This document shows positions 1-63,535 of a DNA stretch of 64,000 nucleotides, in pieces. Source of the stretch: Macrostomum lignano (lineage: Eukaryota); assembly GCA_002269645.1 (NCBI GenBank), contig NIVC01001446.1:1-64000 (forward strand). The letters are read 5' to 3'. Position 1 is the stretch's first letter, and each line of letters opens with the position of its first letter. The position numbers and the translations under genes are program-made. The notes below the pieces were generated by a model that saw only the letters and a list, made by a program, of their open reading frames with translations, did no database searches and had not been told where the DNA came from.

Positions 1-464
1 GCTAAAAATACGGAGCCAAAGAGGATGAAATTTTGATGAGCCACCTGCTTATGATGTTGATCAAGCTCAATTGAGAGTTGCAGAGATTAGGGCTGCAGAT
101 CGGGGTAATCGGGTAGAATTTCAAGAGATGCGCCACGTAGTATTGCTGTGACAGATTTAGGTGTGGTAATTATCGAATTGGTGGAGTTGATAAAAATCGA
201 AATGAACTATATAGAATTGGGTGGAGCATTTAATATTATTACGAACCCTAGGGTAAATTTAACCCTGATTTATATACTAGAGACGAATTAGTAAGTGCTA
301 AAAATTTTTACGATGAGTTAGGAGTAGCCCATGTTAAAAATACCAGCTTGTATAAAAGGATTGTTAATTCTATAAATAACATGCCGGCTGTTGGTGAAGG
401 ATTTAAAACTCCTAGAAAACTTGTTTTAGCTGCCGCGAAAGCTGCTGGACATACAGGTATTTAA
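1..464 (+). pseudogene. Frameshifted 3' part of a Maverick ORF of unknown function
   Basis: Protein-like segments in shifting frames (FDEPPAYDVDQAQLRV; GKFNPDLYTRDELVSAKNFYDELGVAHVKNTSLYKRIV...GHTGI*, stop 462-464). Confidence 0.45.
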
Positions 465-491
465 TTAATTGTTAAATTTATTTTTTATAAA

Positions 492-1094
492 ATGGAATCT
501 AAAAAGATTTGTACTACGTGTAAAATTGAGAAACCGATGACTAAAGAATTTTTTTGTTGGAGAAATGACACAAAAAAAATTAAAAATCTTTGTCGATCTT
601 GTGAGAAAGTTAAATGTACTATGTGGAGAATAAACAATAAAGATAAATGTAATAAATATGCAAAAAATAAATATCGCACTGATGAAAATTACAAAAATAT
701 TAGTCTAATTAGAGGTAGAATAAATTGGGCATTGAGAACTTTTCATGACAAGCATTATATCTCCTATCTTGGTTGCACAAAAGAATTCTTTTTTGATTGG
801 TTAAATTTCACAAGAAATTATTATGTTCCAAAAAATTATACTGGAAAGTTAGATATTGATCATTTCATTCCCGCTTCTTCATTTAGTTACAAAGACGAAG
901 ATCAGATTAAAAAGTCTGAAAATTGGAGAAATAAAAGATACTTAACTAGCGTAGATAATAACTATAAAAAAGTTAAGCAACCAACCATTGAAGAATTTGC
1001 AAAACAATTGGTGCTTTCATGTATTTTTAAGGCTATTAAAAATGAGCGATCATGCGACGCATGCGAACCGAAGGTTCGAACAATTAGTATTTGA
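492..1094 (+). CDS. Free-standing HNH-type (homing) endonuclease with N-terminal Cys4 Zn finger
   Basis: CxxC...CxxC N-terminus; YLGC..EFF..WL, LDIDHFIPASSF, N-W-R-N and DN..K motifs typical of phage/NCLDV HNH endonucleases; own AT-rich upstream region (ttttttataaaATG). Confidence 0.8.
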   Translation: MESKKICTTCKIEKPMTKEFFCWRNDTKKIKNLCRSCEKVKCTMWRINNKDKCNKYAKNKYRTDENYKNISLIRGRINWALRTFHDKHYISYLGCTKEFFFDWLNFTRNYYVPKNYTGKLDIDHFIPASSFSYKDEDQIKKSENWRNKRYLTSVDNNYKKVKQPTIEEFAKQLVLSCIFKAIKNERSCDACEPKVRTISI

Positions 1095-2648
1095 AGGAGG
1101 ATTGTTAGATGTTCAAAAAGGATTAACAAGCTTACCACCAATCTTTACTACTGGAAGGTATACAAATGAATTACACATCCCGTCTTACAACTTCGCAGGT
1201 TAACCCGTGGCCTGAGTGAGGAAGGCAATGTCCTTGCTAGTCACTATTTGTGGCGACACCTTCAAATTGCGCGAAACCCGTCATACAGCTTCAAGTACCA
1301 CTTCAATTGAGAAATCTTTTGAAGGAACAGAGGTAACTCCTCTTCCCAAAGGTAACAAGCTTGAAGACACGGTGGCAATGCGCAGCCAAGCTCCTAAGTC
1401 GGCAGATATGGAGAAGGTTCAGAGAGCAGACGGAGGTGGGCGGTAATTTATCCGCTTAAGGTGTGCTCCAGCCTATTTCGAAAGATTTAGGGCAAACTGC
1501 CGGGTACTAGGTTAGATTTGAGATTAAATCCTGATAATACACCAAAAGCCGATTCAATTCCCATTAACGGTATTGATTGGTTAGCATACTATCATGACTT
1601 AGCATACAGAGATGCTGATAAGAACTCACCCGAGGAAGCATTAAGATTAAAACATGAAGCTGATAGAAAAATGATTCAAGGATTAGATAACTTACAGGGG
1701 TTATCGGTAAGCCAAAGATTAACTCGGTGGATGGTTAAAAAAATCTTACAGTCTAAAGTTAAATTTGGATTGGGAATTAATTACAATCAACATGGAAATA
1801 ATTGTGTTGAGTGTTTATTATTAAGTGGCGGCGGGTTAAGTTCTGATGAGGCAAAGATTCTTCATAAAGAATATCGAAAACCTAAATTTTATAGAAAAAT
1901 CATGAACTTCAAAAAGAATGAAATTTGGTATGCTGATTTAATGTCGATGCCGAACGAAAGAGGATATAAATATATCTTAACCATATTAGATGGTTTTACT
2001 CGATATGCGTGGGCTGTTCCTTTAAAATCCAAAAAAGGAGAGGATGTTGCGGCTGCTTTTAGAAGTCTTGGAGAAAAAAGTGAAAGGTTGTGTGTTGATG
2101 AAGGAAAAGAATTTTACAATCCTCATATGTATAAATTATATCATTTTGAAAAAGGACAAGAAAGGAAAAAAGACGCGAATGGGGAGTATATTAATAAAAT
2201 TTATTCTATTTACGGCGAAAGTAAAAACGCATTAATAGAAAGATTTAATCGAACTTTAGGTAAGAAATTGTGGTTTCAATTTAGTCTGAATGGAAATCAA
2301 AAGTGGGTAAAAATATTACCAGACGTTGTGAAAGATTATAACAATTCATATCATTCGGCTATAAAGATGACTCCTCAACAAGCTTATAACAATCCTGAAA
2401 AAGTTAAAGTTACTTTTGGAGAATTTGAAAAAAAGAAAACTAAAGGTTTTAAGGTTGGTGATTCTGTTTATATCTATAAATGGAAAGATAAGTTTGAAAA
2501 GGGAAGAAAAGGATATTGGAAAATAAGTGAGAAATTTACTATCAGTAAAGTTTTAAATACCAATCCTACAACCTATATAATTGCTGATAAGGACGGTGAA
2601 GAAATATTGGGTTCTTTTTATGAGAACCAGCTAATGTCTGCGAACTAA
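1042..2648 (+). CDS. PLA2-like domain fused to Polinton DDE integrase; join(1042..1200,1500..2648), about 435 aa
   Basis: Spliced junction reads ELHIPSYNFAG|PGTRLDLRL followed by IDWLAYYHDLAY and HEADRKM (parvovirus VP1u/adintovirus PLA2 motifs); integrase WYADL, CVDEGKEF, IERFNRTL and C-terminal FKVGDSVYI...YENQL; start codon position uncertain. Confidence 0.88.
1201..1499 (+). ncRNA. Group I self-splicing intron, subgroup IC1, 299 nt, no internal ORF
   Basis: P1 CAGGU(1196-1200)/GCCUG(1210-1214) with U.G at the 5' splice site; P3 1257-1263/1432-1438; P4 UGCGC/GCGCA; P5abc with GAAA loop; 11-nt receptor CCUAAG(1393-1398)...UAUGG(1407-1411); P7 1422-1428/1464-1469; P8; P9.0 AG/CU; omega G1499; removal restores the reading frame. 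Confidence 0.95.
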
Positions 2649-2658
2649 GTTTGAACAG

Positions 2659-2883
2659 TTACTTAAGACAACAGGGTAGTAAATTTTTTATAACAAACAA
2701 AAACAATATTATTACTATTATTGTTACTAAGATTATTATTGACATTTGTTCAACAGATATCAAACTTAAATTTTGATTAAGTTCATTAACCGGCACATTT
2801 CCGATGTAGGAATAATTTACCTTCATTTTTTTATATATATTTTTCATAATAAACGTCGTTTCTGTTATAGAATAATAATTCAT
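2659..2883 (-). CDS. Small single-pass membrane protein of the Maverick, start uncertain
   Basis: Hydrophobic SIIILVTIIVIILFLFVI then KNLLPCCLK*; convergent with the integrase stop. Confidence 0.45.
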   Translation of the reverse strand: MNYYSITETTFIMKNIYKKMKVNYSYIGNVPVNELNQNLSLISVEQMSIIILVTIIVIILFLFVIKNLLPCCLK

Positions 2884-2898
2884 TTTTTAAATATTTTT

Positions 2899-3213
2899 TT
2901 ACATAAAAATTTCAATTTCATTCTCAGAATCACTGGTTTCATATGAACTATTTGTTGATTCGGAATCTGTTGATCTAACCTCCCAATCATCCGAATTTAA
3001 ATAATCTCCAAGTTGAAATATTAACTCTCCCTCTTGTTCTAAATCATACATCTCATCTAACTCTAATGGATAAAGTTTTAGGTCATGTTTATCGTCATAT
3101 TTTAAATAAACTTCATCAATTATTCCGTTCAAGATATGTTGTTTTATTATCTCTGCATTTTTAGCAACAGTCTCAAAAGTATCACTAACAGAAAAGGTGT
3201 AAACTCGGGTCAT
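2899..3213 (-). CDS. Acidic 104-aa Maverick protein of unknown function
   Basis: Intact ORF with AT-rich codons, ATG preceded by aaaa, Ser/Glu-rich tail. Confidence 0.55.
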   Translation of the reverse strand: MTRVYTFSVSDTFETVAKNAEIIKQHILNGIIDEVYLKYDDKHDLKLYPLELDEMYDLEQEGELIFQLGDYLNSDDWEVRSTDSESTNSSYETSDSENEIEIFM

Positions 3214-3303
3214 TTTTAGTAACAGAAAAAGACCCTTCGCGCCTGCGGCGCGTGCGACGGGTTATAGAGAGTTTGTGTGTATTGGGGAGAGTTGGAAGCG
3301 TTG

Positions 3304-3552
3304 ACGATACAAAATAGCCAGCAAACCAAAGCGTTCGACGAGAGCGTGTTCTCACCATTCAAAGAGAATTAATCGTTGTAAGTGTGAAATGACTTGTTTG
3401 ACCGAAATGAAGCGAGGATGAGCGAAGCGAGTTGAGCGAAGTGAAGACGAGCGAAAATGAAGGGAAAACAAGTCATTTCACACTGATAAAGGGTTAAATT
3501 GTTTGCAATGGTGAGAACGGTTTGCTGGCTATTTTGTATCGTATATACTACT
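3304..3552. repeat. Maverick terminal region with nested internal inverted repeats
   Basis: Perfect inverted pairs 3304-3327/3519-3542 (24 bp), 3348-3359/3507-3518 (12 bp), 3381-3399/3466-3484 (19 bp); terminal ACTACT. Confidence 0.8.
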
Positions 3553-4497
3553 GGACTCGCTGACAACCTACCTGGATAGGAACAGTGATTTCTGCATTGT
3601 CAACGTCAGCACAGCCAAGTCAGTAGATGTGCAATACGAATATGTGGAGCTCCGAGTTGCTATGTAGGTTTGGTGCTCAGGTTCTTTTCACTTTGTATTC
3701 TATGCTGATAGGCAATACAAGTTTGTCATGCATTTCAAACTGCAGCGAAGGACAGCATTCTGTCGTGAACCTCATGCTGCTCGCCATCTCCTCTTTGGTA
3801 TTCCGATTGCCGCCGGAATGCGGCGAGAGAATGTCACTGAGCGTCACCATCGTGCTGTCGATGTGCGTGTTCCTGCAGCTCACTGACAATTACATACCAA
3901 CTCAAGGAGATTCTGTACCGCTGCTCAGTGAGTGTCGCGGCCGGACTCTTTTATTTTATTGAGATTAAAAATAGTGTCTGTTGAATAAGGACCTGCTCCT
4001 GTGAAATTCTGCAGGCTGGTACTTCAGCATCGCGGTACTTCTGACCATGGCTAATCTGGTTGCTAACGCCTTCGTTCTGAGTTGCCACTTTGAGCAGTTT
4101 TCTGAGCATGCTCGAGTCCCCAATCGTCTGACTCGGCTGCTGTTTCTCAATAGATTCGTCTGCGGGCGCCGATTTTGTCGAGAGCCGTCCAGAAGTAAAA
4201 ATTTTAACAGTGTTGCGCAACGAAGCTCCATCGGAGTAAGTGTTCGTTTACTGCTAGTGCCGTTTTATCAGGAGAAGCCAAACCAAATGTGTCACGGTCC
4301 CACAGGTCAGTGATGCTGACAGCAAAGAAATGAGCGACATCTCGTCGCGACGAACCGTCAACTTCGACTCGCAGTTGGAGCAGCCTTCGCGTTGCCGGGC
4401 CACTGATGTCAACAGCTGGAGCGCTGTCGTGGCCACTGCTGACCGCTGCTTTTTCGCGATCTTTTTCGGCCTGACGCTGGCTTAGATTCTGCTATGA
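3553..4497 (+). pseudogene. Cys-loop receptor subunit copy 1, 3' half, interrupted by the Maverick
   Basis: DSLTTYLDRNSDFCIV matches copy 3 DSITKYLARNDEFCI; TM1-TM2 exon 3746-3927 with small deletions; TM3-TM4 exon from 4015 with a frameshift near 4305 and TAG at 4483-4485. Confidence 0.85.
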
Positions 4498-18302: not shown

Positions 18303-18988
<686 letters not shown>

Positions 18989-34242: not shown

Positions 34243-36285
34243 CTATTGATTTACTTAGAGGTTATTTGAGGCCTTGATTTTAGGCTGCTTGAGTACTTGG
34301 GTCAGGTATTCATTAGTCGGTGATTATTTTCTTATTAAATTTGCTAGCATCAGCACTGTTGGTAAAATTCGGCAGCAAATTGTATTTCTCGTGCCTGTTA
34401 CAATATGCCTGCTCAACTATCTAATCTCTCTAGATAATTTCGGACCCATTAGTCATGCCACACGACATTGCGCGAGTATGATAAGCATACAATTGGTATT
34501 TTGGCTAACAAGTGGTTTTCTTTGTGTTCTTGGATTTTCATTGTAGCTCGAGTACTTGAGAACCATTTTTTAATGAACATGAATGATATAGTTTTGTTGC
34601 AAAAACTATGAAGACTTCACATTTATTAATTGGACGAAAGCCAATGAAAGAATCATCTCTCTCAATTGCCAGATACGAGTATACCAGGATGCCAGAAATT
34701 ACGAGTTAAAAGCTTTATAGAGCTGATGCAGCTTGAAGTTAACTCGCTGAAGTACATGGGAATCGATGTGAATGAATAGAGGAAGAGAGTTCTGTAAGCG
34801 GTCTCGAACTCGGCAACAATTGGCTGTACCTATGATTGGCTAAGAAACACCAAAACACGACAAGGCGCAAGCCTAGAGACGGGGTAGAGAGGGCAACCAA
34901 TCAGGCTTAACTCGCTTAAACTTGCAAACTCGCTTAAAACTTGCTATGATTTTATGTAGACATACTATTACTAATTCAACAAAGCATGCAAAAATGTGCC
35001 AGACCAGAGTTTCTAACTAATAATTTAACAGAAACAGAAAAGTAGTTTAATCAATATATTGTTTTATAAGCATTAACTGTCAGAGTTATCTTACTCTATG
35101 CTATATACGCTAGCCTACGCTATACTATTTATTTAACTTCTAATAGTAGTATGGGTTAACAGAACACTGCCGCAGAAATTTTCGTGGAAAAGCCGTGGGC
35201 CTAGTGAGTGAAGTGAGTGAACATACGGGCCTATGTAAACGCATTGAGAAACTTATCTATTTGCGAGTCTTACGTCCTGATGCAACGGTAACTTCTAGTG
35301 GTCCTTGGTTAGACTTTGGCGCGCATAACTGGAGGGGGCTGAGACGACTGGGGAGGGGGTGTTAGCGCAGGCACCTGGACCAAAGGAATCAGAGTGCCGG
35401 GCCCTACCTGACCGAGAGCTAGCGATCACTCATTAGTGCAAGTGTACTCGTACCTGCACAAAGCAATATAAACGCTTTTTAAACGTTTAATCGGGCAGTT
35501 GTAATTTCAACTCAAGTCTGACTAGCTGTCTGCTTGCGCTTTTTTATCTGTCTGGACTTGATATCGCGTGACTTGTTCCTGCTTGCAGATCGGAACGGCA
35601 GTCCGTATTAAAACACGCCCTGGGACTCTAATCAGCGTCTCTGGCTATATTTTAAGAAACTTCTTGCTTAAATACGCAGACATCGCTTGTATACAGACAG
35701 TTCGTGTTCAGGTATTTCGACAATTCTCGACAGCCCTCGGGAGCTGAAAAAAGCACCACTGAAGCGTACATGTAAGTAAACTGCAGCGTTGCACATGTCT
35801 GGTATCCTGGACCATCAATACTGTACAAGCAGCACAAGTTATAGCTTAGCTCGTAGATTATTAGGCCGGGTATCAGAGCATCAAAAGGAGCAGCAGACTG
35901 CGGATACGCCTTTCCTCAGTCTTTCTGAAGATGAAACCAGCATGTAGCTGTCTGCAAACTAATCAATTATTCTTCAAACCTCTCAGGCGACTCTCGTGTG
36001 AGTTTTATATCAGAGAGGCCTTGAGTTCAATTAAGTTTTAAGCAAATTTTTTGTTAATCTTATCCACCTGCTTTATGTGGAGCTTGATGGCAAAAAATGG
36101 GTCATAACTAAGGACATTGATAGCAACAGAGTAAGTCAGCAATGCACATCGGATCTTTTCAGTGTATCAGGCTTTCTAAAGTGTCTGAAAATTCGTAGTC
36201 GATCAGTACATTTAGTATAGGGAAAGAGTGCTAGCTTTTGGCTATAGGAATTTAATTGTATGATCAATTTTTTTTCGTCCACAGA

Positions 36286-39200
36286 ATGCAACATCAGCGT
36301 ATGCTCAGCTTGAGCCTGTCTATTCTGGTCGTTGCTCTGAACTGCTCAATATCAATCAGTTCACTCATCTGCGAGAACGGCGGCACTTTTGACTCTCTTA
36401 ATTATGAGTGCATCTGCACTCCTAATTCTTACGGCATTCGATGCGAAACTTTGTTCGTGACTTCGGACCCGTGCGCCGATTGGAAATCCAAACAGGTGAT
36501 TCACGACTCACAAGCAGTGCACAGGCTCGGCAATGCAATGATTTGTGGAGAGTCGCCAGACCTACCGTGTGTGGACTTCTCTGTCATTAAAGCTGACTGG
36601 TACCGTTTGGCATCTCCTGCTGGCGGCCAATTAGTAATTGGCTGTCCGACAGGCGCCATAGCCTGCGGTAGTCAACAAGCGTATTTCCTTGTTAACGAAA
36701 CCATTGAACAGGAAGACAATGCCAACAGAATCCTGTTAAGAGCCAGGGCATACCGCTATCGGCCTAACCTGACCGGCTCATGCTTTTTGTCTGGCGACAC
36801 AAGCTATCCAGTGCGCATTCTGAAGTGCTTCTCTGAGCTGACTCTGTACTACCTTCAGCCTTTACCGAGCTTTCTTAATCACTATTGCATAGGAAGCAAG
36901 GCACCCTGCGACGCTGGCCTCATCTCCGTGGAAGGCACAGGGTTCGAGCCCTGTATCAGACAAACACAGTGTCTGCCAAAGCTGACCGAGAATGCTTTAG
37001 CGCCTCAGTTGCGCTTAGATTATGAAGTGAAACCTAATGGTCAGTACAAAGCTCTTTTTAGGTGCAACGTTTTTGCTTCTTTCCAAGTCAACACAAGCGA
37101 GGCTAATGGAGTGCTTTATCGGATAGAGTTTGAGCTGAACTTTAGAAATGGAACGTCAGTGCTGATTCAGAAATGCGTTTCGAATAATATCTCTATTGGG
37201 GTTGGCAAAAACCGAACTTTTGAGTGCAGGTCCGAGTATGTACTTGCCAGAGAAACCAATGTGTATGGCGGATCACTAACTTGTCGTAGTCGTGCGAAAT
37301 GCCGAAACTCTGGAGCTGAGTACAACTCCATGCCTGTAGTTTCGAATAGTCACGGATTTTACTTCAAGCACTATTTTCAAGGAGCCAGAGATGTGATCAC
37401 ACCGAATGAGCCGACTTCTCTATGCATCGACTCAGTGAACATTCCTGCCTTAACAGAAGTACAGTTTTTCGTCTCAGTGGGTAGACAGCAGATTATTTCA
37501 ACTGATCAAATTGATGTTTCTATTATAAGACGCGATGGAAATGAAAGTTTGAGTTGTGGATTTGCGATGAAAAACGACCGGCGCAAAAACAAGAAGGTGT
37601 GCATCGATATGATGCTCTACAATCATGATCCTGACAATCGAATCCCGCTCGGTTTGACAAAGGGTCAGCAGATCAGCATTATCAAAGTGAATATTTCATT
37701 CGCTTCAATGGCAGACGGTCTTTTCACTGTTTTGAGCAATGGTACTTGGTTCCCTCTTAAAATCCAGAATATCGAAATGAAAGTTGACTTGTCAAGATTA
37801 ATGACAGACGTCACTACCTATTTGCATCTTTACACCGATCCCCAGGTGAAGACGGCAAAGTCAGCCTACACATCCGAGGAAACTTTCGGTATTAGTAATG
37901 GCTACTACAGCTTATTGGCTCACAGAATCCTCCCTTATGAGATACAAGTGAAAGTGGATGGCTGGTACGTAACGGAAATATCAATGCGCTATTTGTACTA
38001 CATAATTTCGATTCGAGGTAGCAGTTCAACCGGATCTATTCAAAATCCGGAAGTTACATATAAAGTTCCTCCGAGAGATCGGGATTCGAGTCGCCGAAAT
38101 TTGACATTACCACTTGAACGAGACGGATTGCCTTTCGGGGTGACAGCAGAAAACGTTGGATATGCAATGAAAATCCGCTTCAAATTGTATGGAACGATTC
38201 TCTACGTGTGGGGCTTCAGGACTGGCTCTTTAAGAGACTGCCTTGGGAACTTTGTAATGAGTAACGCAAATATGCAAGCTGCGTCTTCTTGTGCAAAGAG
38301 CTTTTATCCTGTTGGAAATGGCCGAATCGCTCTGGATGTGATGGTTGTGCCCGGATTTTACGATACACCAAACATGGTGGAAGGACTTATTTATGGATCA
38401 AATCGAGGCCCAATCGATAGTAATATAGACAACATGTTCTCTTCTCAGTTTCAAATGCCCGCCATTAAAGACTATTCTAAACGAATCCAGCCCACTGAAA
38501 TTCTTGGCATCTGCACGTGTGGTAAAAAAGAATTACTGACGAGCAACTGCTTCGTATCAATTAATAATGTCAAAAGAGACAAACGAACGGCTGAAGCAGC
38601 CCCTGTAAATAAAGGCGCGGTTTCCTTTCAGCAACTCCCAAAAAGAGAAATATCGCAGAAAGAGGCAGATGAGTTCTGCAACACGTTCGTGCAGCTTCAG
38701 CTGAGAAGGTCTGTCAGCACTGACATCTGTGCTCAAATGAAAGATCCCACCGGTCAAGCAGATTATATCAGCCAGTTTAAGCTTATATGTGCTCAATATG
38801 CCACTGTGCTTGGAACATTCGACTCGACTCAGTCCCTGTTTAACTCGATGCTGGGCATGTGCTACACAGAGATGACCTACAATGCATCCGTGGTTCTGGG
38901 AAACTCCAGCAAGATTGAGGCTCTGGTTGAAGATCTGTGCCCATCAAACTGCTCAGGCAGAGGCCAGTGTCTAAGTGGCGAATGCGCCTGCATGGACGGA
39001 TTCTGGGGTCCCGGCTGCGAGTTTGAGATCGCCAGGCGAGACGAAATTCCTATCGAGGTTGAGCTGCTGCAACGGAGCATCTTCTGCTCCTCCGACAAGT
39101 GCACGGCTGTCTACCTGAGCGTAAAACCATTGCTGAGGTCCACTGACTCTGTGTGCAACATCCAGCTGAACTCCAGTCTCAATTACTCGACACCGTCTGT

Positions 39201-39611
39201 TTACATCAGCGGAGACATCGTGAAGTGCGAGCTGCAAGAGATACACGATAGTCTATTCGAAGACCAGCGAATGTTTTTGCTGCTTCAGGTAAGGCTGTGT
39301 AAAGCTTCAAAATGCTTAAAAATGGAATCTCATAAAACCCGATCGATCTTGAACAGATCTCGCTGACGGCAGCCGATTGGGAGTCGAGCAACTCGGTGTC
39401 CGTGCTACTGCACCAGGCGCAGTGCGATGGCCGGCCTGTGACCTGCGACAGCGACTTGTTGACCTGCCAAGCCGCGGGTCTGCAGCGAGAGAACGGCGGT
39501 GGCGGCAGCGAGTGTCCGCCAACCCTAGAAAAACGAGGTTGCTTGAGACTGCCGACTGCGAGCCTCCTGGTGACTGTCACTGTGTTGATCGCGCTGATTA
39601 ACTACTACTGA
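36286..39611 (+). CDS. VWDE-like cell-surface protein (EGF, UMOD/D8C-like, VWD-like, EGF, hydrophobic C-tail); join(36286..39288, 39357..39611)
   Basis: Signal peptide LSLSILVVALNC; CENGGTF EGF; DPCADW...WYRL...CPT...CGS; LYTDPQVKT; CPSNCSGRGQC..GECACMDGFWGPGC; in-frame GT-AG intron adds a GPI-like tail; start Met at 36286 or 36301. Confidence 0.75.
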
Positions 39612-46420: not shown

Positions 46421-49400
46421 GATGTTACGTTAATGTAATATGATTTATCATAGATTTTTCAAAGTTGCGTCGCCCGTCGCGACCGCGGCAAAAAGGGAAG
46501 CAATGCTGCTGTTGCTGCGGCGGCGGCGGCGGCGGCGGCGGGGCACGGACTCTACTACTGCTCTTTCCAACATGCAAATGCACGGTAATTTTAAATAGGC
46601 CTGCGATGATTGGAAGGGGATGTCAAGATAACAAAGCCACCGGAAAGTAATTTGGAATCTTTATGATCCAGATGGATTTTTGACAGCATTGTTGTGCGAT
46701 AGAACGATAACTTTTCACTGAGTAATCCTGCAAAACAAAAGCTAAAAAATGTTTTGAATGTAACAAACTAATTTAAACTCCCCTGAATGACTGGCGTTAT
46801 ATTATAATTTTCGACCAAGTCCGCCGTCCGCTTTTCGAAGTCGTTAAAATTAGAGAATCTGAATATATATATATATAATTAAATCAAAGATGCATTTTTA
46901 ATGCATAGTGTAGAAGGTTGTAAAAATATCATAGCACTATTTATATTTAGTACAAAATAGATGCTTATCAATTAGACCCAATCAGACATTGAAATACATA
47001 TTGCTCAGTCAGCCAAATCTGACAGTCTTAAGCTGTCGAATATAATAAGCTATCGTCCCTTTTAGTAGAAGTAAACCAGATCTTGCCATTCTGTTTGCTT
47101 GTCTCTATTGAAATGATTCTGTTTTTTGCGAGGGCATTGCACATATTTTTCAGGCAGTGCAGAACATTAGGCCTAATGATGACAAATATGGGCTTTTGTC
47201 ATAACTCATAAGATGGTTTAGAAATAGTGCTGTAAAAATTAGGTTGGGTTTACCTAAGCAAATCAAAGGTTGCAAGGCTTTGATTAAATAAACATTGAAT
47301 TTTTTAGGATGTTTGAATTCTCAAAACAATATAATTTCTAGTTTAAAATTTATTTTTTAATCTGTTTATTTTATTTACTACTCGTTAAAGCATTATATAT
47401 CATTAAAATACTTGGCTTACTAGTTTATTAAAGGCCCATAATGTTTGTGTCATCTCTTGCTTATAATTATTAGGCCTGGGCCTACTATGATTGATGATAC
47501 AAATTCTAGCTTTTTAGGGGCCTTAGTGCAAAGGCATTTGCCTATTAGGCTAAGGCCTAGAATCAAAGCTGACTCCATAGTTTGGATGGTGACATGACAT
47601 ATATACTAGGATTTCTGGCATAACTATGGCTTTGTTCATTATATTATTTCTTGTTTCAAATTTGTTCCAGCGCACGAAAAAAATGGCTGGATGACTACTG
47701 GCTCCTATGATAATTATTCTACGCGTCTATAAACCACTGGCTCTATTTTGGGGACCCCCAGGACCCAACGGTTTATACGAACACTATTGAGGGAATGTGG
47801 ACACATTGCAAGGCAAAGTTTCGTAACATGTATAGGACAAGTGATAGTCTATTCGAAACTTATCTACAGGAATTTCTGTGATACCGTCTATATACTGGGT
47901 TATTCCATGATAGGGTCATCAAAGGTATAGAAATATTTTTAAAAATTATTTGCAAATGTGAATATTTCATTTTGCATATAATTATGTATAGTTTCATTTT
48001 TATGTAGTTTCATACACATTTATCTACCTCTAGGTATATATATTTTGTTTTGATCATAGTACCCTTGCAAGATTTTAAATGTCCCGCGGGACATTATAAA
48101 AAGTTTAATCTAGTTTTCAATAAGAAAAAAAGTGAATAAACATAATGCATCAAGTGCATAAATAATAAAAATCTTTCTTTCTTATATCTAAAGACTGAAA
48201 TTATAAAGTTTTATGATCTAATATAGTTCTATCTATCAAAATTTTTTATTTTAAAAAGTTTGATTTCCCTTTTTAAGTGTTAAAAATGACCATCATTTTT
48301 TTACAAAAAGTTGTTGTACTAATTTTCAAGAGGTTTATAAGTTGATATTTTTTGCTAAAATATTTTCTGAGCCTATATTTAAGTTTATAGTCATTTTTGT
48401 TAGTTTATGATAAGTGTAACATGTTAAAAAAACCCTGCAAAGTTACCTAACGACCATCATTTTCTGGTATTCTGAAATCTGTTGATCTTCATAAAACCTG
48501 AATTACTATCATTTATTCCTAAATTTTATACAAAAAACTGAATTTACTGATATTCTAAAATCATGTCTTTTTTTTAAATGTGAATTACTTATTCAATTTC
48601 TCTTTCAAAGTTTTTACAGTTTTGATTGTAAAGAAAAATATAGTGGAATTCAAGTCTTTTATTAAAAATGTATACTGTCAATTACTTGTTTGATACCTTA
48701 AAATCATTTTCAACCTGCACTATTAAAAAGGTTGTTCCAATTACTAACCATGCACCTAGAACTCTCCACTTTAGTTTGCAATGCACCTTAACACATGCCC
48801 CAATCTTCAGCATAAGTAGTCTAACTAGACTCAAGTTTTTACTATCCATTGGTGCTACTGCTTATTGCCTAACAAATAATCTGTATTTGCCTTTGGTTTT
48901 GTTAATTGTTATATTCTATTCTTTGAATTCTTGAATAGATTAGGACTGTCCATCTTTATGATCATATATTGAGTTGTGCAATCATGAAGTGATGTTTTTG
49001 TTGAAGGTGCATAAGTACGTTTGATCTGAAATATGAAACAGGTATAATAAATTTTATGGTTAGACAAGCAAGTTATAGTTTTTATATGAACAACTATGGA
49101 TTATAAACAATCTTTTAACCAAGATTGTATCTAAAAATAGAGAATCCTAATACACTTTTTAAAACTGAAGGTCGTTTTTTTGAAACAAATGACCATCAGT
49201 CAACGACCGTCATTTAAGAAAAAATGTGTAACACAGTTAAGTTATCTACTAAAATGTAATAATTGTTTGTAACCATTCATCTAGCTATTGTTTACTTCAA
49301 TTAATGATCAATTGAGACAAAAACTTGCTTGATTCGCAGGAATCTTAAACTTGAGTTATAAAGTTGGATACATAAACTTTCACCAAAAACGACCGTCATC

Positions 49401-50052
49401 AAAAGTTTCTCTCTGCTAAATCAACACAGTAAGACAAATGACTTTAAAATGTATCTTATCTCAATCTAGAGGTCACGCCCATAAATATAGAACTCACAAA
49501 GTCTCAATTTAGTTTGTCTTTTGTATGATTACTGATTATTATTTGCTCCAACCCAACGACCATCATCTCGTGGAATTACCCATCTATAGAATGTGTTTGG
49601 CCACTTTCTCTACTGGGTGTCACATTATTATCCCCTCTAATTATCTTTCTTGTGACTTCAAACTCTAATTTGAACTTTTTTGGTAGTGGGTCATCTTTTC
49701 TGAACTTTTCCAAGTACGGTTTGTCGTAATCTCTAATAACTTGTTGCTTTTTAAATAAAATAATATAACAAATGAAACCATAGTTATGCCAGATTTCCTA
49801 GTATACAACAATGGGCCCTATTAGAATACAATTTTAGATCTTGCTAATGTGCAATATAGGTTATAAATATTATGCTTAGGTATAATAAATGATATTAAAT
49901 GTTATATATAACTTACTTATATAAAATATAACTAATTTTGCAATAGTATAGACTATGGCATAAGCCATAATATCTATGGCAGGCTGCCCTGATGGCCTTC
50001 AAAGCCGGACGATACGCTGGCGGCTCCCTGCTGCTCAGCGCGCTGACTGCCC

Positions 50053-55954: not shown

Positions 55955-57818
55955 TTGAGACTTACGAGTAATACTAGCTTCAAGTAGATACTAGCTCGTA
56001 TGACTAGCAAATTTAGTCTTATCTTTGTTACATTGATATCTGTTGCTAGATTGACGGATAAATTTGTCAAAGTTTGCTGTTTGCATGAACAGAAGCATGT
56101 ATACGTACATGTACTGTTGGTTCAAATCATCTGCTGACTGCTGTTATTGTATTGAAATGATATGACACAAATATGTATTGTCTGCTCTACTTGAGAGTAA
56201 AAAAATCGAAATAAAATAAAATTGCAATAAAAACCTAAAGTGCTTAAAAAAATTAAATTGTCTTGAACATCTTCGAGCTAGCGAAAAGCTACAATATTTG
56301 CAAACTTGCTTTTTAGAAAAACTCTGATATCATCCTGAAAAAAAGTTTCAAAATATAAATGTTATTGATCACGAGCCTCTTTGCAAATTAAAATTGCATG
56401 ATGATGAAAGGCTGGTGATTTTAAGTTAAACAGCTCTCAATAATCAATCCTACTCTGCACCAATATGCGCCTTCAAAGGAATTTAAGCCTGGGACATTTG
56501 CCGAAATGCGAAAGTTTGCATGGCGCAGCAAAGTAAAACAAAATCAGTCAGTTTTTTAAATAAATAAATAGTTTCTTATGCTTTAACGACTGTTTTGCAT
56601 CAGAAATTTATTAACTCCGATTTAGTATGTTTAAAAGAATCTGCTACAAGAGATTATTTAATTTCGTTTTTTGCAACGATTCAAGATGAACGATTTAATA
56701 TAATATTTAGGTAACAAATTGAGGTTAAAAAACAAATAAGATGACATTAAGTTCTTTTTAAAAATAGAGGAAACTTATGTAAAATTAATTGAATTTTTTT
56801 ATTATCAATTTGTGCTTAAAGGCTATACACATTTTCTGGCAATGACATAAGCACTGCTTCTGTTTTACATGGGAATTAGGAATAGAATCTCAATTCAATA
56901 TGGGCGCATGCTGCACATAGTCATAGCATAGGCTATAGTCAGCTACTAAAGGCTTATCCTTAACCTCAAGCGCATTTTTCAGCTGCGACATCTAGTACAA
57001 TTACAATAGCCTAGACCTATGCTATTATCCTAGGTTTGGCTGCTTTGGCAGTAGGTATTTTCTCAAAGTTAAGTCAATTTTCCAGTACAGTAGGAGAGCA
57101 TAGTTAGTGGCACATGGTATGTTACTAAGTAAGATGCAAAGTGCCTACTCTCCCTAAAAATCTAGTTTTATCTTGTTTTGTTATAAAGAAAATTGGGCCT
57201 AGTTGTATTACTATTTCTTAAGTTTATTATTTTAAAGTGGTGCCCTTCAAAAAAGCCTAGTTTCTCATTATAGGCAGCAGGCCCTTGGCCCTAGTGACCT
57301 AGTTCTATGTTTATAGTCATAGAAATGCAAAAGTTTTATTAGGTCTACTAAAATTGTTTTGACCTTATGCTTATTATAGTTAAGTATTATAATTTTTAAT
57401 TTTCCTATGTTAAGCTTAATTTTAAAATTATTTAATAATATATAATAGCTACCTGATTATTAGAAATTGTTATGATAAAAATGATAATATATTGATAGAA
57501 AAATGTAGTAATACTATTAAAAATATAATTAAAAACAAATAATAATATAAATTTTATTGACTTGAAATTTCTGTAAATAAGTATTTCTTTTAAAATTTAA
57601 ATAAGGTTGGCATAAAAAATAATAACTATTTATAATTATCTCAAATATATGAACAATACTCTTCAATATTTTTATTATAAATTTATTTAACTAGGTCAAG
57701 AATTATAGTCTCATAGTTGGTGTCACCTAGAGAATTAGTTAATATCTCACAATCTTACCCAGAGAGTCAGTTGGTAATCTCATAGTCAAGCTCTATTTCT
57801 ATGACTTACAGCATCAAG

Positions 57819-59127
57819 ATGGCATCCAACAAGCAGCCAGAAGTGAAGCACATGGGCTATTGGTACTTTGGTGGAGTCGCCAGCGCCATGGCCGCAGCCT
57901 GCACCCATCCGTTAGACCTGCTGAAGGTGCATCTGCAGACGCAGCAGAAGGCAGACATTGGGCTGGTTCGCATGGGTGTCGTTGTGCTGAAGCGGGATGG
58001 CATTATGGGACTGTACAATGGCCTTTCTGCTTCCATCATGCGCCAGCTGACATACTCCATGACCCGATTTGCCATCTACGAGACCTACAAGAGCAGAAAA
58101 GGCCAGGCCAAGATGTCGTTCGCCGAGTCTGCCGGCGTCGCCCTAATTGGCGGCTTCGTTGGCGGCGTGGTTGGCAACCCGGCCGACATGGTGAACGTGC
58201 GCATGCAGAACGATGTCAAACTGCCGCTGGATCAGCGGAGGAATTATCGTCACGTGTTTGACGGGCTCTACCAGGTGGGCGGAGTCACCTGATATTGCCA
58301 ATTTTGCTTTTGTGCAATTGTTTATTTGCGTGCATGGGATTTAAAAGTGCATGTACTCTTGAGCAGGGCAGTACTACCATGTGTTATCGGGTCCCGTGAC
58401 CAATGCTATGATCTGTGGCAGCCCCACCTATGACCAGTCTATGAGCAGCGACAGCCCACCCTGAACAGTCTATGAGCAGCGACAGCCCCACCCTGAACAG
58501 TCTATGAGCAGCGACAGCCCACCCTGAACAGTCTATGAGCAGCGACAGCCCCACCCTGAACAGTCTATGAGCAGCGGCAGCCCCACCCCATGACCAGTCT
58601 ATGAGCAGCTGCAGCTCCACCCCATGACCATTCTGTGAGCATCGGCAGCCCCACCCTATGACCAGTCTATGAGCACCCCATGACCATTGCAGGTGTGCCG
58701 CAATGAGGGCGCCGTCAAAGTTATGAACGGAGTCTCAATGACGTCCACACGAGCCGCCCTGGTCACCTTCGGCCAGCTGGCCTTCTACGACCTATTCAAG
58801 GGCGCCCTGATGTCCACCGGCTTGTTCGGCGACGACCCGTTGACGCACTTCACTGCGAGCTTCGGGGCGGGCGGCACAGCCACCCTGGTCACGCAGCCGT
58901 TCGACGTGATGAAGACTCGCCTGATGAACGCCAAGCCGGGCGCCTACACGGGTCTCTCCGCCTGTGCCGCCGACATCTACGCCTCCGGTTTCCTGTTCTT
59001 CGGCTTCTTCAAAGGCATCGTGCCGGCGTTTGTGCGTCTGGCTCCGCACACGGTGCTCACCTTCGTGTTCCTGGAGCAGCTCAAGGCTAACTTTGGTTAC
59101 ACTGTCACGGTTGCCAAGGCCGCTTAG
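57819..59127 (+). CDS. SLC25A10: Mitochondrial dicarboxylate carrier; join(57819..58274, 58693..59127)
   Basis: WYFGGVASAMAAACTHPLDLLKVHLQTQQ; LRQLTYS-like segment; NPADMVNVRMQND; three Px(D/E)xx(K/R) signatures. Confidence 0.92.
58410..58690. repeat. About 40-bp minisatellite filling the SLC25A10 intron
   Basis: (cagtctatgagcagcgacagccccaccctgaa)-like units. Confidence 0.9.
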
Positions 59128-62809: not shown

Positions 62810-62871
<62 letters not shown>

Positions 62872-62884
62872 ATGTCTGTCTTAG

Positions 62885-62949
<65 letters not shown>

Positions 62950-63012
62950 GCCTGTCTGTGTGTCTGTCTGTCTGTCTGTCTGTCTTAGTGTCTGTCTGTC
63001 TGTCTGTCTTAG

Positions 63013-63049
<37 letters not shown>

Positions 63050-63224
63050 TAGTGTCTGTCTGTCTGTCTGTCTTAGTGTCTGTCTGTCTGTCTGTCTTAG
63101 TGTCTGTCTGTCTGTCTGTCTTAGTGTCTGTCTTAGTGTCTGTCTGTCTGTCTGTCTGTCTGTATGTCTGTCTTAGTGTCTGTCTGTCTTAGTATCTGTC
63201 TGTCTTAGTATCTGTCTGTCTTAG

Positions 63225-63261
<37 letters not shown>

Positions 63262-63312
63262 TAGTGTCTGTCTGTCTTAGTATCTGTCTGTCTTAGTATC
63301 TGTCTGTCTTAG

Positions 63313-63363
<51 letters not shown>

Positions 63364-63480
63364 ATGTCTGTCTTAGTGTCTGTCTGTCTGTCTGTCTGTA
63401 TGTCTGTCTTAGTGTCTGTCTGTCTGTCTGTCTGTATGTCTGTCTTAGTGTCTGTCTGTCTTAGTATCTGTCTGTCTTAG

Positions 63481-63533
<53 letters not shown>

Positions 63534-63535
63534 GC
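62810..63535 (+). repeat. (TGTC)n microsatellite with ttag interruptions
   Basis: Direct reading. Confidence 0.98.

What the first reader, a model, noticed from the sequence alone, without database searches (positions are those of the whole stretch)
1201..1499. Intact group IC1 self-splicing intron in a protein-coding gene of a Maverick/Polinton in an animal nuclear genome
Seen in the sequence, every core helix pairs. P1 has U1200.G1210. P10 pairs the 3' exon CCGGGU with 1203-1209 (one bulge). P3 is CACCUUC/GGAGGUG. P5a is CUUCAAG/CUUGAAG, with an L5b GAAA loop and an exact Tetrahymena-type 11-nt receptor. P7 has the G-binding pair G1424-C1468 and bulged A1423, followed by P9.0 AG/CU and omega G1499. 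P4 (GCGC/GCGC instead of GCGG/CCGC) and P7 (GAGCA/UGCUC instead of GACUA/UAGUC) carry compensatory changes, which points to selection on structure. Established knowledge: nuclear group I introns are typically in rDNA of fungi, algae and protists, and animal examples are mitochondrial in early-branching lineages; some algal viruses carry IC1 introns in protein genes. Inference: an animal DNA virus/transposon carries a working ribozyme. I do not know of this being described, but could not search.
Basis: partly seen in the sequence, partly recalled or inferred. Interest (0 to 1): 0.95.

Follow-up and report, generated by a model that had tools for sequence, protein, structure and literature searches.

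The report
Group I intron in viral integrase gene
A 299-base self-splicing-type (group I) intron really does interrupt the integrase gene of a virus-like DNA element that the assembly places inside the genome of the flatworm Macrostomum lignano; it belongs to a mobile intron family shared with giant viruses and polinton-like viruses, so the ribozyme is ordinary but its animal location is unusual.

Summary
Window 1201-1499 matches Rfam RF00028 (group I intron) at 60 bits, above the 50-bit cut-off, with E 8e-15. Both whole-window scans miss it.

- **Junction.** Removing the intron joins exon 1 (...YNFAG) to exon 2 (PGTRL...). This matches residues 32|33 of the closest intron-less homolog.
- **Relatives.** Nine other elements from metagenomes carry a related intron at the same codon junction. 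Most integrase homologs have none.
- **Structure.** Across 12 aligned introns, 93.8% of proposed pairs form and 42 of 66 pairs show compensatory changes. This includes the P7 pseudoknot.
- **Wider family.** Related introns sit in giant-virus RNA polymerase and capsid genes.
- **Endonuclease.** Relatives carry an HNH-like endonuclease gene inside the intron. In the window its homolog (492-1094) stands free, just upstream.
- **Host.** The flanking DNA is Macrostomum lignano (99% protein identity).

Unproven points:
- Integration rests on assembly contiguity alone.
- Only the integrase end of the element is in the window, so "Maverick/Polinton" is not established.
- The IC1 label is consistent with the architecture but was not formally tested.
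- No expression evidence was available.

Group I introns were already reported in polinton-like viruses of protists (2025). I call this a new member of a known kind in a new host setting.

The parts
282..464 (+). C-terminal tail of the gene upstream of the integrase module (function unknown)
   Evidence: The last ~58 aa align with the gene that abuts the integrase in the closest relative, L015 (46.7% identity, E 5e-10). No continuous reading frame or homology was found further upstream in the window. The number of breaks, if any, is unresolved.
492..1094 (+). Free-standing HNH-like (putative homing) endonuclease ORF, 200 aa, intact; its 3' end overlaps the integrase start codon
   Evidence: tblastn matches ORFs that lie inside the same-site introns of L012 (46% over 89 aa, E 3e-20), L008 (E 4e-11) and L009 (E 1e-8). 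It also matches a copy downstream of the integrase in L015 (45.6% over 182 aa, E 4e-39). There are 1437 relatives at E<=1e-3. Conserved residues are CxxC...C, G94, D123-H124, P127, N147, N156 and K159. No Pfam or PHROG family matches. The AF2 model has pLDDT 91.5. Foldseek finds only weak hits (best E 0.15), mostly HNH domains.
1042..1200 (+). Integrase exon 1 (53 aa, ends ...HIPSYNFAG)
   Evidence: Residues 22-53 are 69% identical to P0001 residues 1-32 (E 1e-16). The frame runs into a stop codon at the first intron codon.
1201..1499 (+). Group I intron, 299 nt, with no internal ORF (P1 partner/IGS 1203-1214, P2, P2.1, P3-P9, terminal G 1499)
   Evidence: RF00028 60 bits, E 8e-15. nhmmer with the family profile gives 208 bits and finds a single copy in the window. 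Covariation over 12 introns is. P2 and P2.1 stems are.
1289..1366 (+). P5abc extension: P5a 1289-1295/1360-1366, P5b 1301-1324 with GAAA loop 1311-1314, P5c 1329-1343
   Evidence: P5a: 7 of 7 pairs show changes on both sides and 100% of cells pair. P5c: 4 of 5 pairs show changes on both sides.
1386..1417 (+). P6-P6a-P6b with the 11-nt tetraloop-receptor motif (CCUAAG 1393-1398 / UAUGG 1407-1411)
   Evidence: Read directly in the sequence. In P6 and P6a all cells pair and 5 of 6 pairs change on both sides.
1422..1469 (+). P7 pseudoknot (1422, 1424-1428 with 1464-1469; A1423 bulged) enclosing the P3 3' strand (1432-1438) and P8 (1440-1455)
   Evidence: P7: 100% of cells pair and 3 of 6 pairs change on both sides. 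Four different sequence versions occur in the family.
1500..2648 (+). Integrase exon 2 (382 aa plus stop): rest of the PLA2-like domain, rve catalytic core and C-terminal domain; intact
   Evidence: PF00665 rve E 8e-8; PF08398 weak. 72% identical to P0001 from its residue 33 onward. 453 homologs at E<=1e-3.
2899..3213 (-). Small intact ORF (104 aa, acidic tail) of unknown function, the last AT-rich gene before the composition change
   Evidence: ORF list. No Pfam hit. No homolog in the fetched relatives. No exact record in the collection.
3304..3542 (.). 239-nt imperfect palindrome at or near the element/host boundary (element terminus or unrelated foldback; unresolved)
   Evidence: Nested inverted repeats with 24-nt perfect outer arms. 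Unique in the window. GC has already risen from 25-30% to ~45% by about 3215-3230.

Best explanation
Window 1201-1499 is a genuine, structurally complete group I intron. It has P5abc and an IC1-like architecture. It interrupts the integrase gene (PLA2-like domain plus rve core) of a polinton-like or Maverick-type element.

**Insertion site.** The intron sits between the G and P codons of the conserved Y-x-x-G|P-G-T motif.

**Inferred mechanism.**
- The internal guide sequence (1203-1214) pairs with the end of exon 1 to form P1, with the U1200.G1210 wobble at the splice site.
- It pairs with the start of exon 2 to form P10.
- An external guanosine bound in P7 attacks after U1200.
- The terminal G1499 then takes the same site and the exons are ligated.
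- The ligated message reads ...YNFAG-PGTRL... and encodes a full-length integrase.
- Unspliced RNA stops translation at the first intron codon.

**Family and mobility.** The intron belongs to a mobile family that occupies this same site in a minority of related integrases. Close relatives sit in giant-virus RNA polymerase and capsid genes. The spread is inferred to occur by endonuclease-driven homing. Relatives carry an HNH-like ORF, or a second unrelated ORF, in the loop of P2.1. The window copy has no internal ORF, and the homologous HNH-like gene stands free 107 nt upstream of the insertion site.

**Host.** The assembly places the element fragment in the genome of the flatworm Macrostomum lignano.

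**Shown versus inferred.** Shown: family membership, structure conservation, exact exon continuity, same-site relatives, intron-less relatives, endonuclease homology and host identity of the flank. Inferred: present-day splicing, homing, and true integration.
For: - **Family match.** RF00028 60 bits, E 8e-15, full-length. Related introns score 53-105 bits.
- **Exon junction.** It maps to residues 32|33 of intron-less P0001.
- **Same insertion site.** L001, L002, L008, L009, L010, L012, L013, L014 and L017 share it, in integrases 35-72% identical to the window's.
- **Sporadic distribution.** Among the top 120 homologs, 53 have the contiguous motif and 8 start right at PGT.
- **Covariation.** 93.8% of cells pair, against 78.3% when shuffled and 34-47% when slid. 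42 of 66 pairs change on both sides, against 9-13 when slid. The covariation score is 0.452 against 0.06-0.10.
- **Guide sequence tracks the exons.** The guide sequence changes with the synonymous third positions of exon 2 and with the last codons of exon 1 across loci.
- **P9.0 switches.** It is AG/CU in some loci and AU/AU in others.
- **P2 and P2.1.** Both stems form from different sequences in each locus, and the internal ORFs sit in the P2.1 loop.
- **Intron-plus and intron-less copies in one sample.** Exon 2 is 99.2% identical over 1271 nt. A cluster of synonymous differences lies right at the insertion site. This pattern resembles co-conversion.
- **HNH-like ORF homology.**
- **Related introns in giant-virus genes.** One lies after the NADFDGD motif of an Rpb1 gene (L007). 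Others lie in a capsid gene (L003-L005). nhmmer scores are 165-246 bits.
- **Host.**
Against: - I have no expression or splicing evidence for this copy.
- The thermodynamic fold alone is not exceptional (z = -1.54).
- P8 and P6b are shorter than in the relatives.
- The gene upstream of the HNH-like ORF can be followed for only ~58 aa, so the element may be decaying.
- None of the window's element proteins is on record elsewhere. The closest integrase is only 72% identical and comes from a metagenome.
- The intron family's other homes are viruses of protists. The element's GC (about 35%) differs from the flank (about 45%). This fits an assembly chimera as well as a recent insertion.
- The HNH assignment rests on a motif and weak fold hits only.
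Confidence: 0.8

Rival explanations
1. The intron is real but is now a relic. The element fragment is a dead endogenous viral insertion in the flatworm genome, is not transcribed, and the intron no longer splices or moves.
For: - Only one end of an element lies in the window.
- The upstream gene can be followed for only ~58 aa.
- There are no further copies in the other 60 kb.
- No identical proteins are on record and no flatworm transcript-derived protein appears among the integrase hits.
- P8 and P6b are shortened.
- Some relatives are visibly degenerate. The internal ORFs of L012 and L008 each have one interruption, the free-standing copy in L015 has one, and the L010 intron departs from the canonical splice-site rule.
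Against: - Both integrase exons, the HNH-like ORF and the 104-aa ORF are uninterrupted.
- Every core helix pairs in this copy.
- The changes found only in the window or in its closest branch (P4: window only; P7: window and L002) are compensated on the partner strand.
- The guide sequence matches this copy's own exon sequences.
Confidence: 0.3
2. The AT-rich segment 1 to about 3200-3550 is not part of the flatworm genome. It would come from a polinton-like virus of a protist, or a giant-virus-associated element, in the culture, and was joined to host DNA by misassembly.
For: - There is a sharp GC step from 25-30% to ~45% near 3215-3230.
- All close relatives come from environmental or unidentified assemblies.
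- The intron family is shared with giant-virus genes.
- A 239-nt palindrome lies at the boundary. Such structures can cause assembly artefacts.
Against: - The window is one contiguous sequence whose flank is 99% M. lignano.
- Related elements (L001, L011) are themselves embedded in eukaryotic DNA beside LINE-type and Tc1-type transposon genes. They occur there as at least two copies at different sites.
- A GC step is also expected for a recent insertion.
Confidence: 0.2
3. The match is a chance resemblance, or the interruption is something else, such as a spliceosomal intron, a frameshift or a sequencing error.
For: - Whole-window Rfam scans report nothing.
- The MFE z-score is unremarkable.
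Against: - The targeted scan gives E 8e-15 over the full model.
- Nine same-site homologs show strong covariation.
- The junction is exact at the codon level.
- The ends are U|UAACCC...CUG|C, not GT...AG.
Confidence: 0.01

Closest known systems
Group I introns with homing endonucleases in giant-virus (Nucleocytoviricota) genes, e.g. Bodo saltans virus polr2a/polr2b (PMC5871332) and an integrated giant virus of Cymbomonas (PMC10675990)
   Same: - The introns are self-splicing-type and sit in conserved motifs of essential protein genes of eukaryotic dsDNA viruses.
- They carry HNH or GIY-YIG endonuclease ORFs in some copies and none in others, and the ORF-less copies are thought to rely on an endonuclease supplied in trans.
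- The family found here is directly related by sequence to introns in an Rpb1 gene (L007) and a capsid gene (L003-L005).
   Different: - The host gene here is the integrase of a small polinton-like element, not a giant-virus core gene.
- This copy lies in an animal genome assembly.
- Splicing was confirmed by RT-PCR in BsV and has not been examined here.
RF00028 hits in polinton-like viruses of protists (Rhodomonas lacustris cluster C3, Paulinella micropora, Desmodesmus armatus; PMC12220804, 2025)
   Same: - They are group I introns of 309-376 nt in integrated polinton-like viruses.
- They were detected with the same Rfam model.
- They are described as lying in a gene for a ~50-aa protein, which is the size an exon 1 like this one (53 aa) would give.
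   Different: - The hosts are protists.
- The gene is described as lying just upstream of the capsid gene and is unannotated.
- No structure, insertion-site or endonuclease analysis was given.
- I could not check whether those introns are homologous to this family, because the supplementary tables held no such entries.
IC1-type group I introns of nuclear rDNA (the Tetrahymena LSU intron type)
   Same: - Both share the core P3-P9, P2 plus P2.1, and a P5abc three-way extension.
- Both have a GAAA loop on P5b and the CCUAAG/UAUGG receptor in P6a/6b.
- Both have a bulged A next to the G-binding pair in P7, a U.G pair at the 5' splice site, and a terminal G.
   Different: - This intron lies in an mRNA, not rRNA.
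- It is only 299 nt, with a short P8 and P9 and no P9.1/P9.2.
- Subgroup membership was not tested with subgroup models.
Collaborative homing of an ORF-less intron with an adjacent free-standing endonuclease (cyanophage psbA; Zeng et al. 2009 and Bonocora & Shub 2009, as cited in PMC11296320)
   Same: - An intron without an ORF lies next to a free-standing endonuclease gene.
- Homologs of that gene sit inside the same intron in other genomes.
   Different: - It is entirely untested here.
- The endonuclease target is unknown.
- The element is eukaryotic.
- The same HNH-like gene also occurs next to an intron-less integrase (L015), so the pairing is not obligatory.
Group I introns of animals (mitochondrial genes of cnidarians, sponges and placozoans; established knowledge)
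   Same: They are group I introns in protein-coding genes found in metazoan sequence data.
   Different: - Those are mitochondrial.
- This one sits in a virus-like element within nuclear-type DNA, beside intron-containing receptor and lectin genes.

Membership tests
Group I intron (Rfam RF00028) | Covariance-model score at or above the curated gathering threshold | tested here: met
   60.0 bits against 50, E 8e-15, model positions 1-253. The match is missed when the whole window is scanned.
Group I intron (Rfam RF00028) | Conserved core P3-P4-P5-P6-P7-P8 with the P3/P7 pseudoknot, maintained by compensatory change | tested here: met
   12 introns: 93.8% of cells pair, 42 of 66 pairs change on both sides, and both controls are far lower.
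Group I intron (Rfam RF00028) | U.G wobble at the 5' splice site in P1, terminal G at the 3' splice site, and a guide sequence pairing with both exons | tested here: met
   U1200.G1210, G1499 and P10 (1500-1505 with 1203-1209) are present. The guide sequence changes together with the exons across loci.
Group I intron (Rfam RF00028) | Guanosine-dependent self-splicing activity | not testable with these tools
   No biochemical or expression data were accessible.
Subgroup IC1 | P5abc extension with tetraloop-receptor contact (L5b GAAA with the 11-nt receptor in P6a/6b) | tested here: met
   The sequence elements are present. P5a, P5c and P6a covary. The contact itself is inferred.
Subgroup IC1 | P2 and P2.1 hairpins between P1 and P3 | tested here: met
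   Both stems form from different sequences in eight loci.
Subgroup IC1 | 3' peripheral extension (P9.1/P9.2) | tested here: not met
   Only P9.0 and one short P9 hairpin lie between P7 and G1499.
Subgroup IC1 | Placement by subgroup-specific models or phylogeny | not tested
   No subgroup models or reference set were available.
Maverick/Polinton | Retroviral-type (rve) integrase | tested here: met
   PF00665 E 8e-8 on exon 2. There are 453 homologs, most with PF00665 plus PF08398.
Maverick/Polinton | [quoted passage not shown] | tested here: inconclusive
   The element is cut by the window start. No polymerase domain is recorded in the ~11 kb of the related element L011.
Maverick/Polinton | Double-jelly-roll capsid, packaging ATPase and maturation protease module | tested here: inconclusive
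   The module is absent from the window. A DJR capsid domain and an A32-like ATPase flank the integrase in L001, L011, L013 and L014. No protease was seen.
Maverick/Polinton | Terminal inverted repeats and a short target-site duplication | not testable with these tools
   Only one end is present. That end carries a 239-nt palindrome instead.
HNH (beta-beta-alpha-metal) homing endonuclease | Catalytic D/H...N...N motif on a beta-beta-alpha fold, usually with zinc-binding cysteines | tested here: inconclusive
   D123-H124, N147, N156 and the N-terminal cysteines are at least 90% conserved. No Pfam or PHROG hit was found. The profile against PDB hits Hpy99I at E 0.0088, in the cysteine region only. 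The best Foldseek hit has E 0.15, though the hits are mostly HNH domains.
HNH (beta-beta-alpha-metal) homing endonuclease | Gene located inside a self-splicing intron or next to its insertion site | tested here: met
   Homologs lie in the P2.1 loop of the same-site introns of L012, L008 and L009. The window copy lies 107 nt upstream of the site.
HNH (beta-beta-alpha-metal) homing endonuclease | Site-specific cleavage of the intron-less allele | not testable with these tools
   No data. The co-conversion-like tract between L001 and L011 is only indirect evidence.

The most novel reading that the evidence does not exclude
The element is a truly integrated, recently acquired polinton-like virus of a flatworm, and its integrase mRNA is matured in animal nuclei by ribozyme self-splicing. 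That would be the first group I intron operating in a metazoan nuclear genome. The free-standing HNH-like gene next to an ORF-less intron would also be a eukaryotic example of the collaborative-homing stage proposed for the origin of mobile introns. The sharing of this intron family with giant-virus genes would record genetic exchange between giant viruses, their small parasites and an animal host lineage.
Probability: 0.2. Interest if true: 0.8.

Novelty: new member of a known kind. Interest (0 to 1): 0.55.

Why it matters
- **Location.** Nuclear group I introns are known from rDNA of protists, fungi and algae and from genes of large DNA viruses. Animals have them only in mitochondria of early-branching lineages. 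An intact one in nuclear-type DNA of a flatworm, carried by a virus-like element, would extend where these ribozymes are found. Whether it can work on an animal mRNA could then be checked with existing transcriptome data.
- **One mobile pool.** The same intron family occupies giant-virus polymerase and capsid genes and one precise site in polinton-like integrases. This links these viruses through a single mobile intron-endonuclease pool.
- **Annotation.** Standard whole-contig Rfam scans miss this intron. Gene callers split the integrase into a ~50-aa stub plus a truncated protein, so such introns are probably under-counted.

Tried and rejected
- **Whole-window Rfam scans.** Both the gathering and the E-value scans found nothing. 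Only the 501-nt scan finds the intron.
- **HNH-like ORF.**
  - The word-indexed protein search found nothing. The exhaustive search did find relatives.
  - Pfam, PHROGs and PDB sequence searches gave no usable family.
  - The fold search gave only sub-threshold HNH-type hits.
- **Exact-protein look-ups.** Two window ORFs were looked up to find other assemblies of the same locus. Neither is on record.
- **Other element copies in the window.** A search of the remaining 60 kb found none.
- **IMG/VR searches.** The search with the single integrase found no relatives. The alignment-based search gave four loci, one of them with a same-site intron.
- **Source organisms of the NCBI-derived integrase homologs.** The look-ups gave no names.
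- **Supplement of PMC12220804.** The files held no intron table.
- **Thermodynamic folding alone.** It is not discriminating, with z = -1.54.
- **Rejected readings.** I rejected a spliceosomal intron, a frameshift or assembly error, and a second intron hidden upstream of exon 1. The last is unnecessary because exon 1 aligns from the homologs' N-terminus.
- **Exon handling.** The exons were analysed separately and never joined into one sequence.
Full report
**1. What is in the sequence**

The first ~3.2 kb of the window is AT-rich (about 25-35% GC). The rest is about 45% GC and full of tandem repeats.

On the + strand the AT-rich part holds, in order:
- the tail of a gene (282-464);
- an intact 200-aa ORF (492-1094);
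- a 53-aa reading frame from ATG 1042 to 1200, which runs into a stop at 1201-1203;
- after 299 nt, a 382-aa frame from 1500 to the stop at 2646-2648.

A 104-aa ORF lies on the other strand at 2899-3213. The 382-aa frame carries an rve integrase core (PF00665, E 8e-8) and a weak match to the PLA2-like domain PF08398.

**2. Is it a group I intron?**

Rfam RF00028 matches 1191-1490 over the entire model at 60.0 bits (cut-off 50), E 8e-15, when 1100-1600 is scanned. Scans of the whole 64 kb return nothing, whether at the gathering threshold or by E-value. The speed filters lose the match, which is worth knowing for pipelines.

I also find a P2 hairpin (1215-1238) and a small P2.1 hairpin (1240-1254).

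The minimum-free-energy fold recovers P2, P2.1, P4, P5, P5a, P5b and P5c unaided. Its energy is not exceptional (z = -1.54), so thermodynamics alone proves nothing.

**3. The exon junction**

The exons were kept separate throughout.
- Exon 1 residues 22-53 align with residues 1-32 of the closest homolog P0001 (69% identity, E 1e-16).
- Exon 2 aligns from its first residue with P0001 residue 33 onward (72% identity, E 1e-175).

P0001 and 52 others of the top 120 homologs read straight through the motif [Y/H]-x-[Y/F]-x-G-P-G-T-R-L. The intron therefore sits exactly between the G and P codons of the most conserved motif of the PLA2-like domain. Removing 1201-1499 restores it in frame.

**4. Relatives of the intron**

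Eight of the top 120 integrase homologs begin right at 'PGT'. I fetched DNA for four of them, and each has a group I intron just upstream:
- L001: 59.4 bits.
- L002: 65.3 bits.
- L012, L013 and L014.

A DNA pattern taken from P5b/P5c found L008, L009 and L010 in JGI metagenomes, again followed by 'PGTRLD'. An alignment-based search of IMG/VR added L017, in an integrase only 35% identical. This gives ten same-site introns in integrases 35-72% identical to the window's.

Intron lengths:

| Locus | Length (nt) |
|---|---|
| window | 299 |
| L010 | 328 |
| L013 | 339 |
| L002 | 835 |
| L001 | 852 |
| L012 | 922 |
| L008 | 1212 |

The same pattern also hit closely related introns in other genes:
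- One lies immediately after the NADFDGD motif of a giant-virus-type RNA polymerase largest subunit (L007).
- One lies in a giant-virus-type major capsid gene on 100-132-kb IMG/VR contigs (L003-L005).
- L004 and L006 hold further copies. RF00028 scores across these loci are 53-105 bits.

A profile of the family finds exactly one copy in the window (1254-1507, 208 bits).

**5. Selection on structure**

I aligned twelve intron cores with MAFFT, without reference to structure (A1). I then wrote the window's helices onto the alignment, including the P7 pseudoknot.

| Measure | Observed | Shuffled | Partner slid by 1-3 columns |
|---|---|---|---|
| Cells forming standard pairs | 93.8% | 78.3% | 34-47% |
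| Pairs with a change on both sides (of 66) | 42 | 22.7 | 9-13 |
| Covariation score | 0.452 | 0.172 | 0.06-0.10 |

- No shuffle out of 500 reached any observed value.
- P5a varies at all seven pairs and never breaks.
- P7 occurs in four compensated versions.
- The window's unusual P4 pair and P7 pairs are compensated.

Outside the alignment:
- P2 and P2.1 form from different sequences in each locus.
- P9.0 alternates between AG/CU and AU/AU.
- The guide sequence follows the synonymous third positions of the first exon 2 codons and the last codons of exon 1.

This is what a ribozyme kept functional in many lineages looks like. For the window copy it shows descent from such a ribozyme with every element still in place. 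It does not show activity today.

**6. Signs of mobility, and the endonuclease**

L001 (with intron) and L011 (without) come from one ENA assembly.
- They are two copies of one element, at different sites in eukaryotic DNA that also holds LINE-type and Tc1-type transposon genes.
- Their exon 2 sequences are 99.2% identical over 1271 nt.
- The ~25 nt before the insertion site and the first codon after it differ by a cluster of synonymous changes.
- The intron-less copy lacks the U required at the splice site.
- This looks like a co-conversion tract from homing, though that is an inference.

In L012, L008 and L009 the P2.1 loop contains an ORF homologous to window ORF 492-1094 (E 3e-20, 4e-11 and 1e-8). 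L001 and L002 carry a different, unrelated ORF in the same loop. L013 keeps only a remnant of the ORF.

In the window the homolog is intact but lies outside the intron, between the upstream gene and the integrase, and overlaps the integrase start codon. In the closest relative, L015, which has no intron, the upstream gene abuts the integrase directly. There the homolog lies downstream of the integrase and has one interruption.

The protein family is large (1437 hits at E<=1e-3). It conserves N-terminal cysteines and a D-H...N...N motif. No curated family matches. The fold matches are sub-threshold but almost all are HNH nucleases. I therefore call it HNH-like and a putative homing endonuclease, with moderate confidence.

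**7. The element and the host**

Window ORF 36256-39363 is 99% identical to a Macrostomum lignano protein. Other ORFs carry Neur_chan_LBD, C-type lectin and teneurin-EGF domains. A cys-loop receptor transmembrane exon with ordinary splice signals lies at about 3746-3930. The flank is animal nuclear-type DNA.

- The element is cut by the window start, so only its integrase end is visible.
- Relatives have a double-jelly-roll capsid gene and an A32-like ATPase beside the integrase.
- No protein-primed polymerase was recorded in the 11 kb seen in L011.
- 'Polinton-like element' is justified. 'Maverick/Polinton' in the strict sense is not established.

The boundary is unclear.
- GC rises at about 3215-3230.
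- A unique 239-nt palindrome occupies 3304-3542.
- Nothing downstream of the integrase stop is homologous to the relatives.
- Integration rests on contiguity of the assembly, and I could not find the locus in other records.

**8. Comparison with what is known**

- Group I introns with HNH or GIY-YIG endonucleases, ORF-less derivative copies and RT-PCR-confirmed splicing are described in giant viruses (PMC5871332; PMC10675990).
- A 2025 survey reported RF00028 hits in integrated polinton-like viruses of three protists, without further analysis (PMC12220804).
- Collaborative homing of ORF-less introns with adjacent free-standing endonucleases is a phage concept (cited in PMC11296320).
- Searches combining group I intron with Polinton, Maverick, virophage or Macrostomum found no report for an animal genome or for an integrase gene.

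**9. Verdict**

The intron is a new member of a known kind, the mobile group I introns of the giant-virus and polinton-like-virus gene pool.

Three features have not been reported as far as I could search:
- the fixed insertion site in the PLA2-like motif of the integrase;
- the alternation of the HNH-like gene between intronic and free-standing positions;
- the location in a flatworm genome assembly.

The claim that would make it remarkable is a ribozyme working in an animal nucleus. That depends on integration and expression, neither of which is shown.

Interest is 0.55.

Noticed in passing
window 1-64000 vs 1100-1600: RF00028 is reported only when a short stretch is scanned. Both whole-window scans (gathering and E-value modes) miss a 60-bit, above-threshold intron. 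Routine contig-level Rfam annotation would overlook this family.
   Followed up: yes
window 3304-3542: There is a 239-nt imperfect palindrome with 24-nt perfect outer arms between the AT-rich element and the first recognisable host exon. It is unique in the window. It could be an element terminus, an unrelated foldback element, or an assembly-prone structure.
   Followed up: partly
window ~3746-3930 (+): An exon encodes a cys-loop receptor transmembrane segment, with an AG acceptor and a GT donor. If the ligand-binding exons lie upstream of the window, the element sits inside an intron of this receptor gene.
   Followed up: no
window 18305-18988, 26313-27017, 30324-31343, 32728-34091, 62810-63534 and others: The host part is packed with long tandem arrays of period 4-31 nt, up to 1.4 kb. 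Several long 'ORFs' and the strong GC/AT-skew spikes are artefacts of these arrays.
   Followed up: partly
window 46500-50000 and 56000-58000: Two further AT-rich stretches (25-37% GC) lie in the host part. They share no similarity with the element at 1-3560.
   Followed up: partly
L004 (IMG/VR UViG_3300045733_000773, 5.9 kb); L006 (1.2 kb): L004 holds three introns of this family on one short viral contig, one of them in a giant-virus-type capsid gene. L006 holds two introns within 1.2 kb. The family can be very dense in giant-virus genes.
   Followed up: partly
L007 1981-2291 (JACCDO010770855.1): A close relative of the window intron (RF00028 104.7 bits) lies directly after the catalytic NADFDGD motif of a giant-virus-type RNA polymerase largest subunit.
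   Followed up: partly
L001 5245-5844; L002 776-1477: A second, unrelated intron-borne ORF (about 160-230 aa, no family match) occupies the same P2.1 loop as the HNH-like ORF does in other loci. Its reading frame runs on into the ribozyme core.
   Followed up: partly
L001 vs L011 (ENA ERZ25070786): These are two copies of one polinton-like element at different sites of an unidentified eukaryotic genome, beside LINE-type and Tc1-type genes. One has the intron and one does not. A cluster of synonymous differences is confined to the insertion site.
   Followed up: yes
window 1042-1104: The integrase start codon lies inside the 3' end of the HNH-like ORF. It adds about 21 residues that the closest homologs lack. 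At the position of their start codon the window has a leucine codon.
   Followed up: partly
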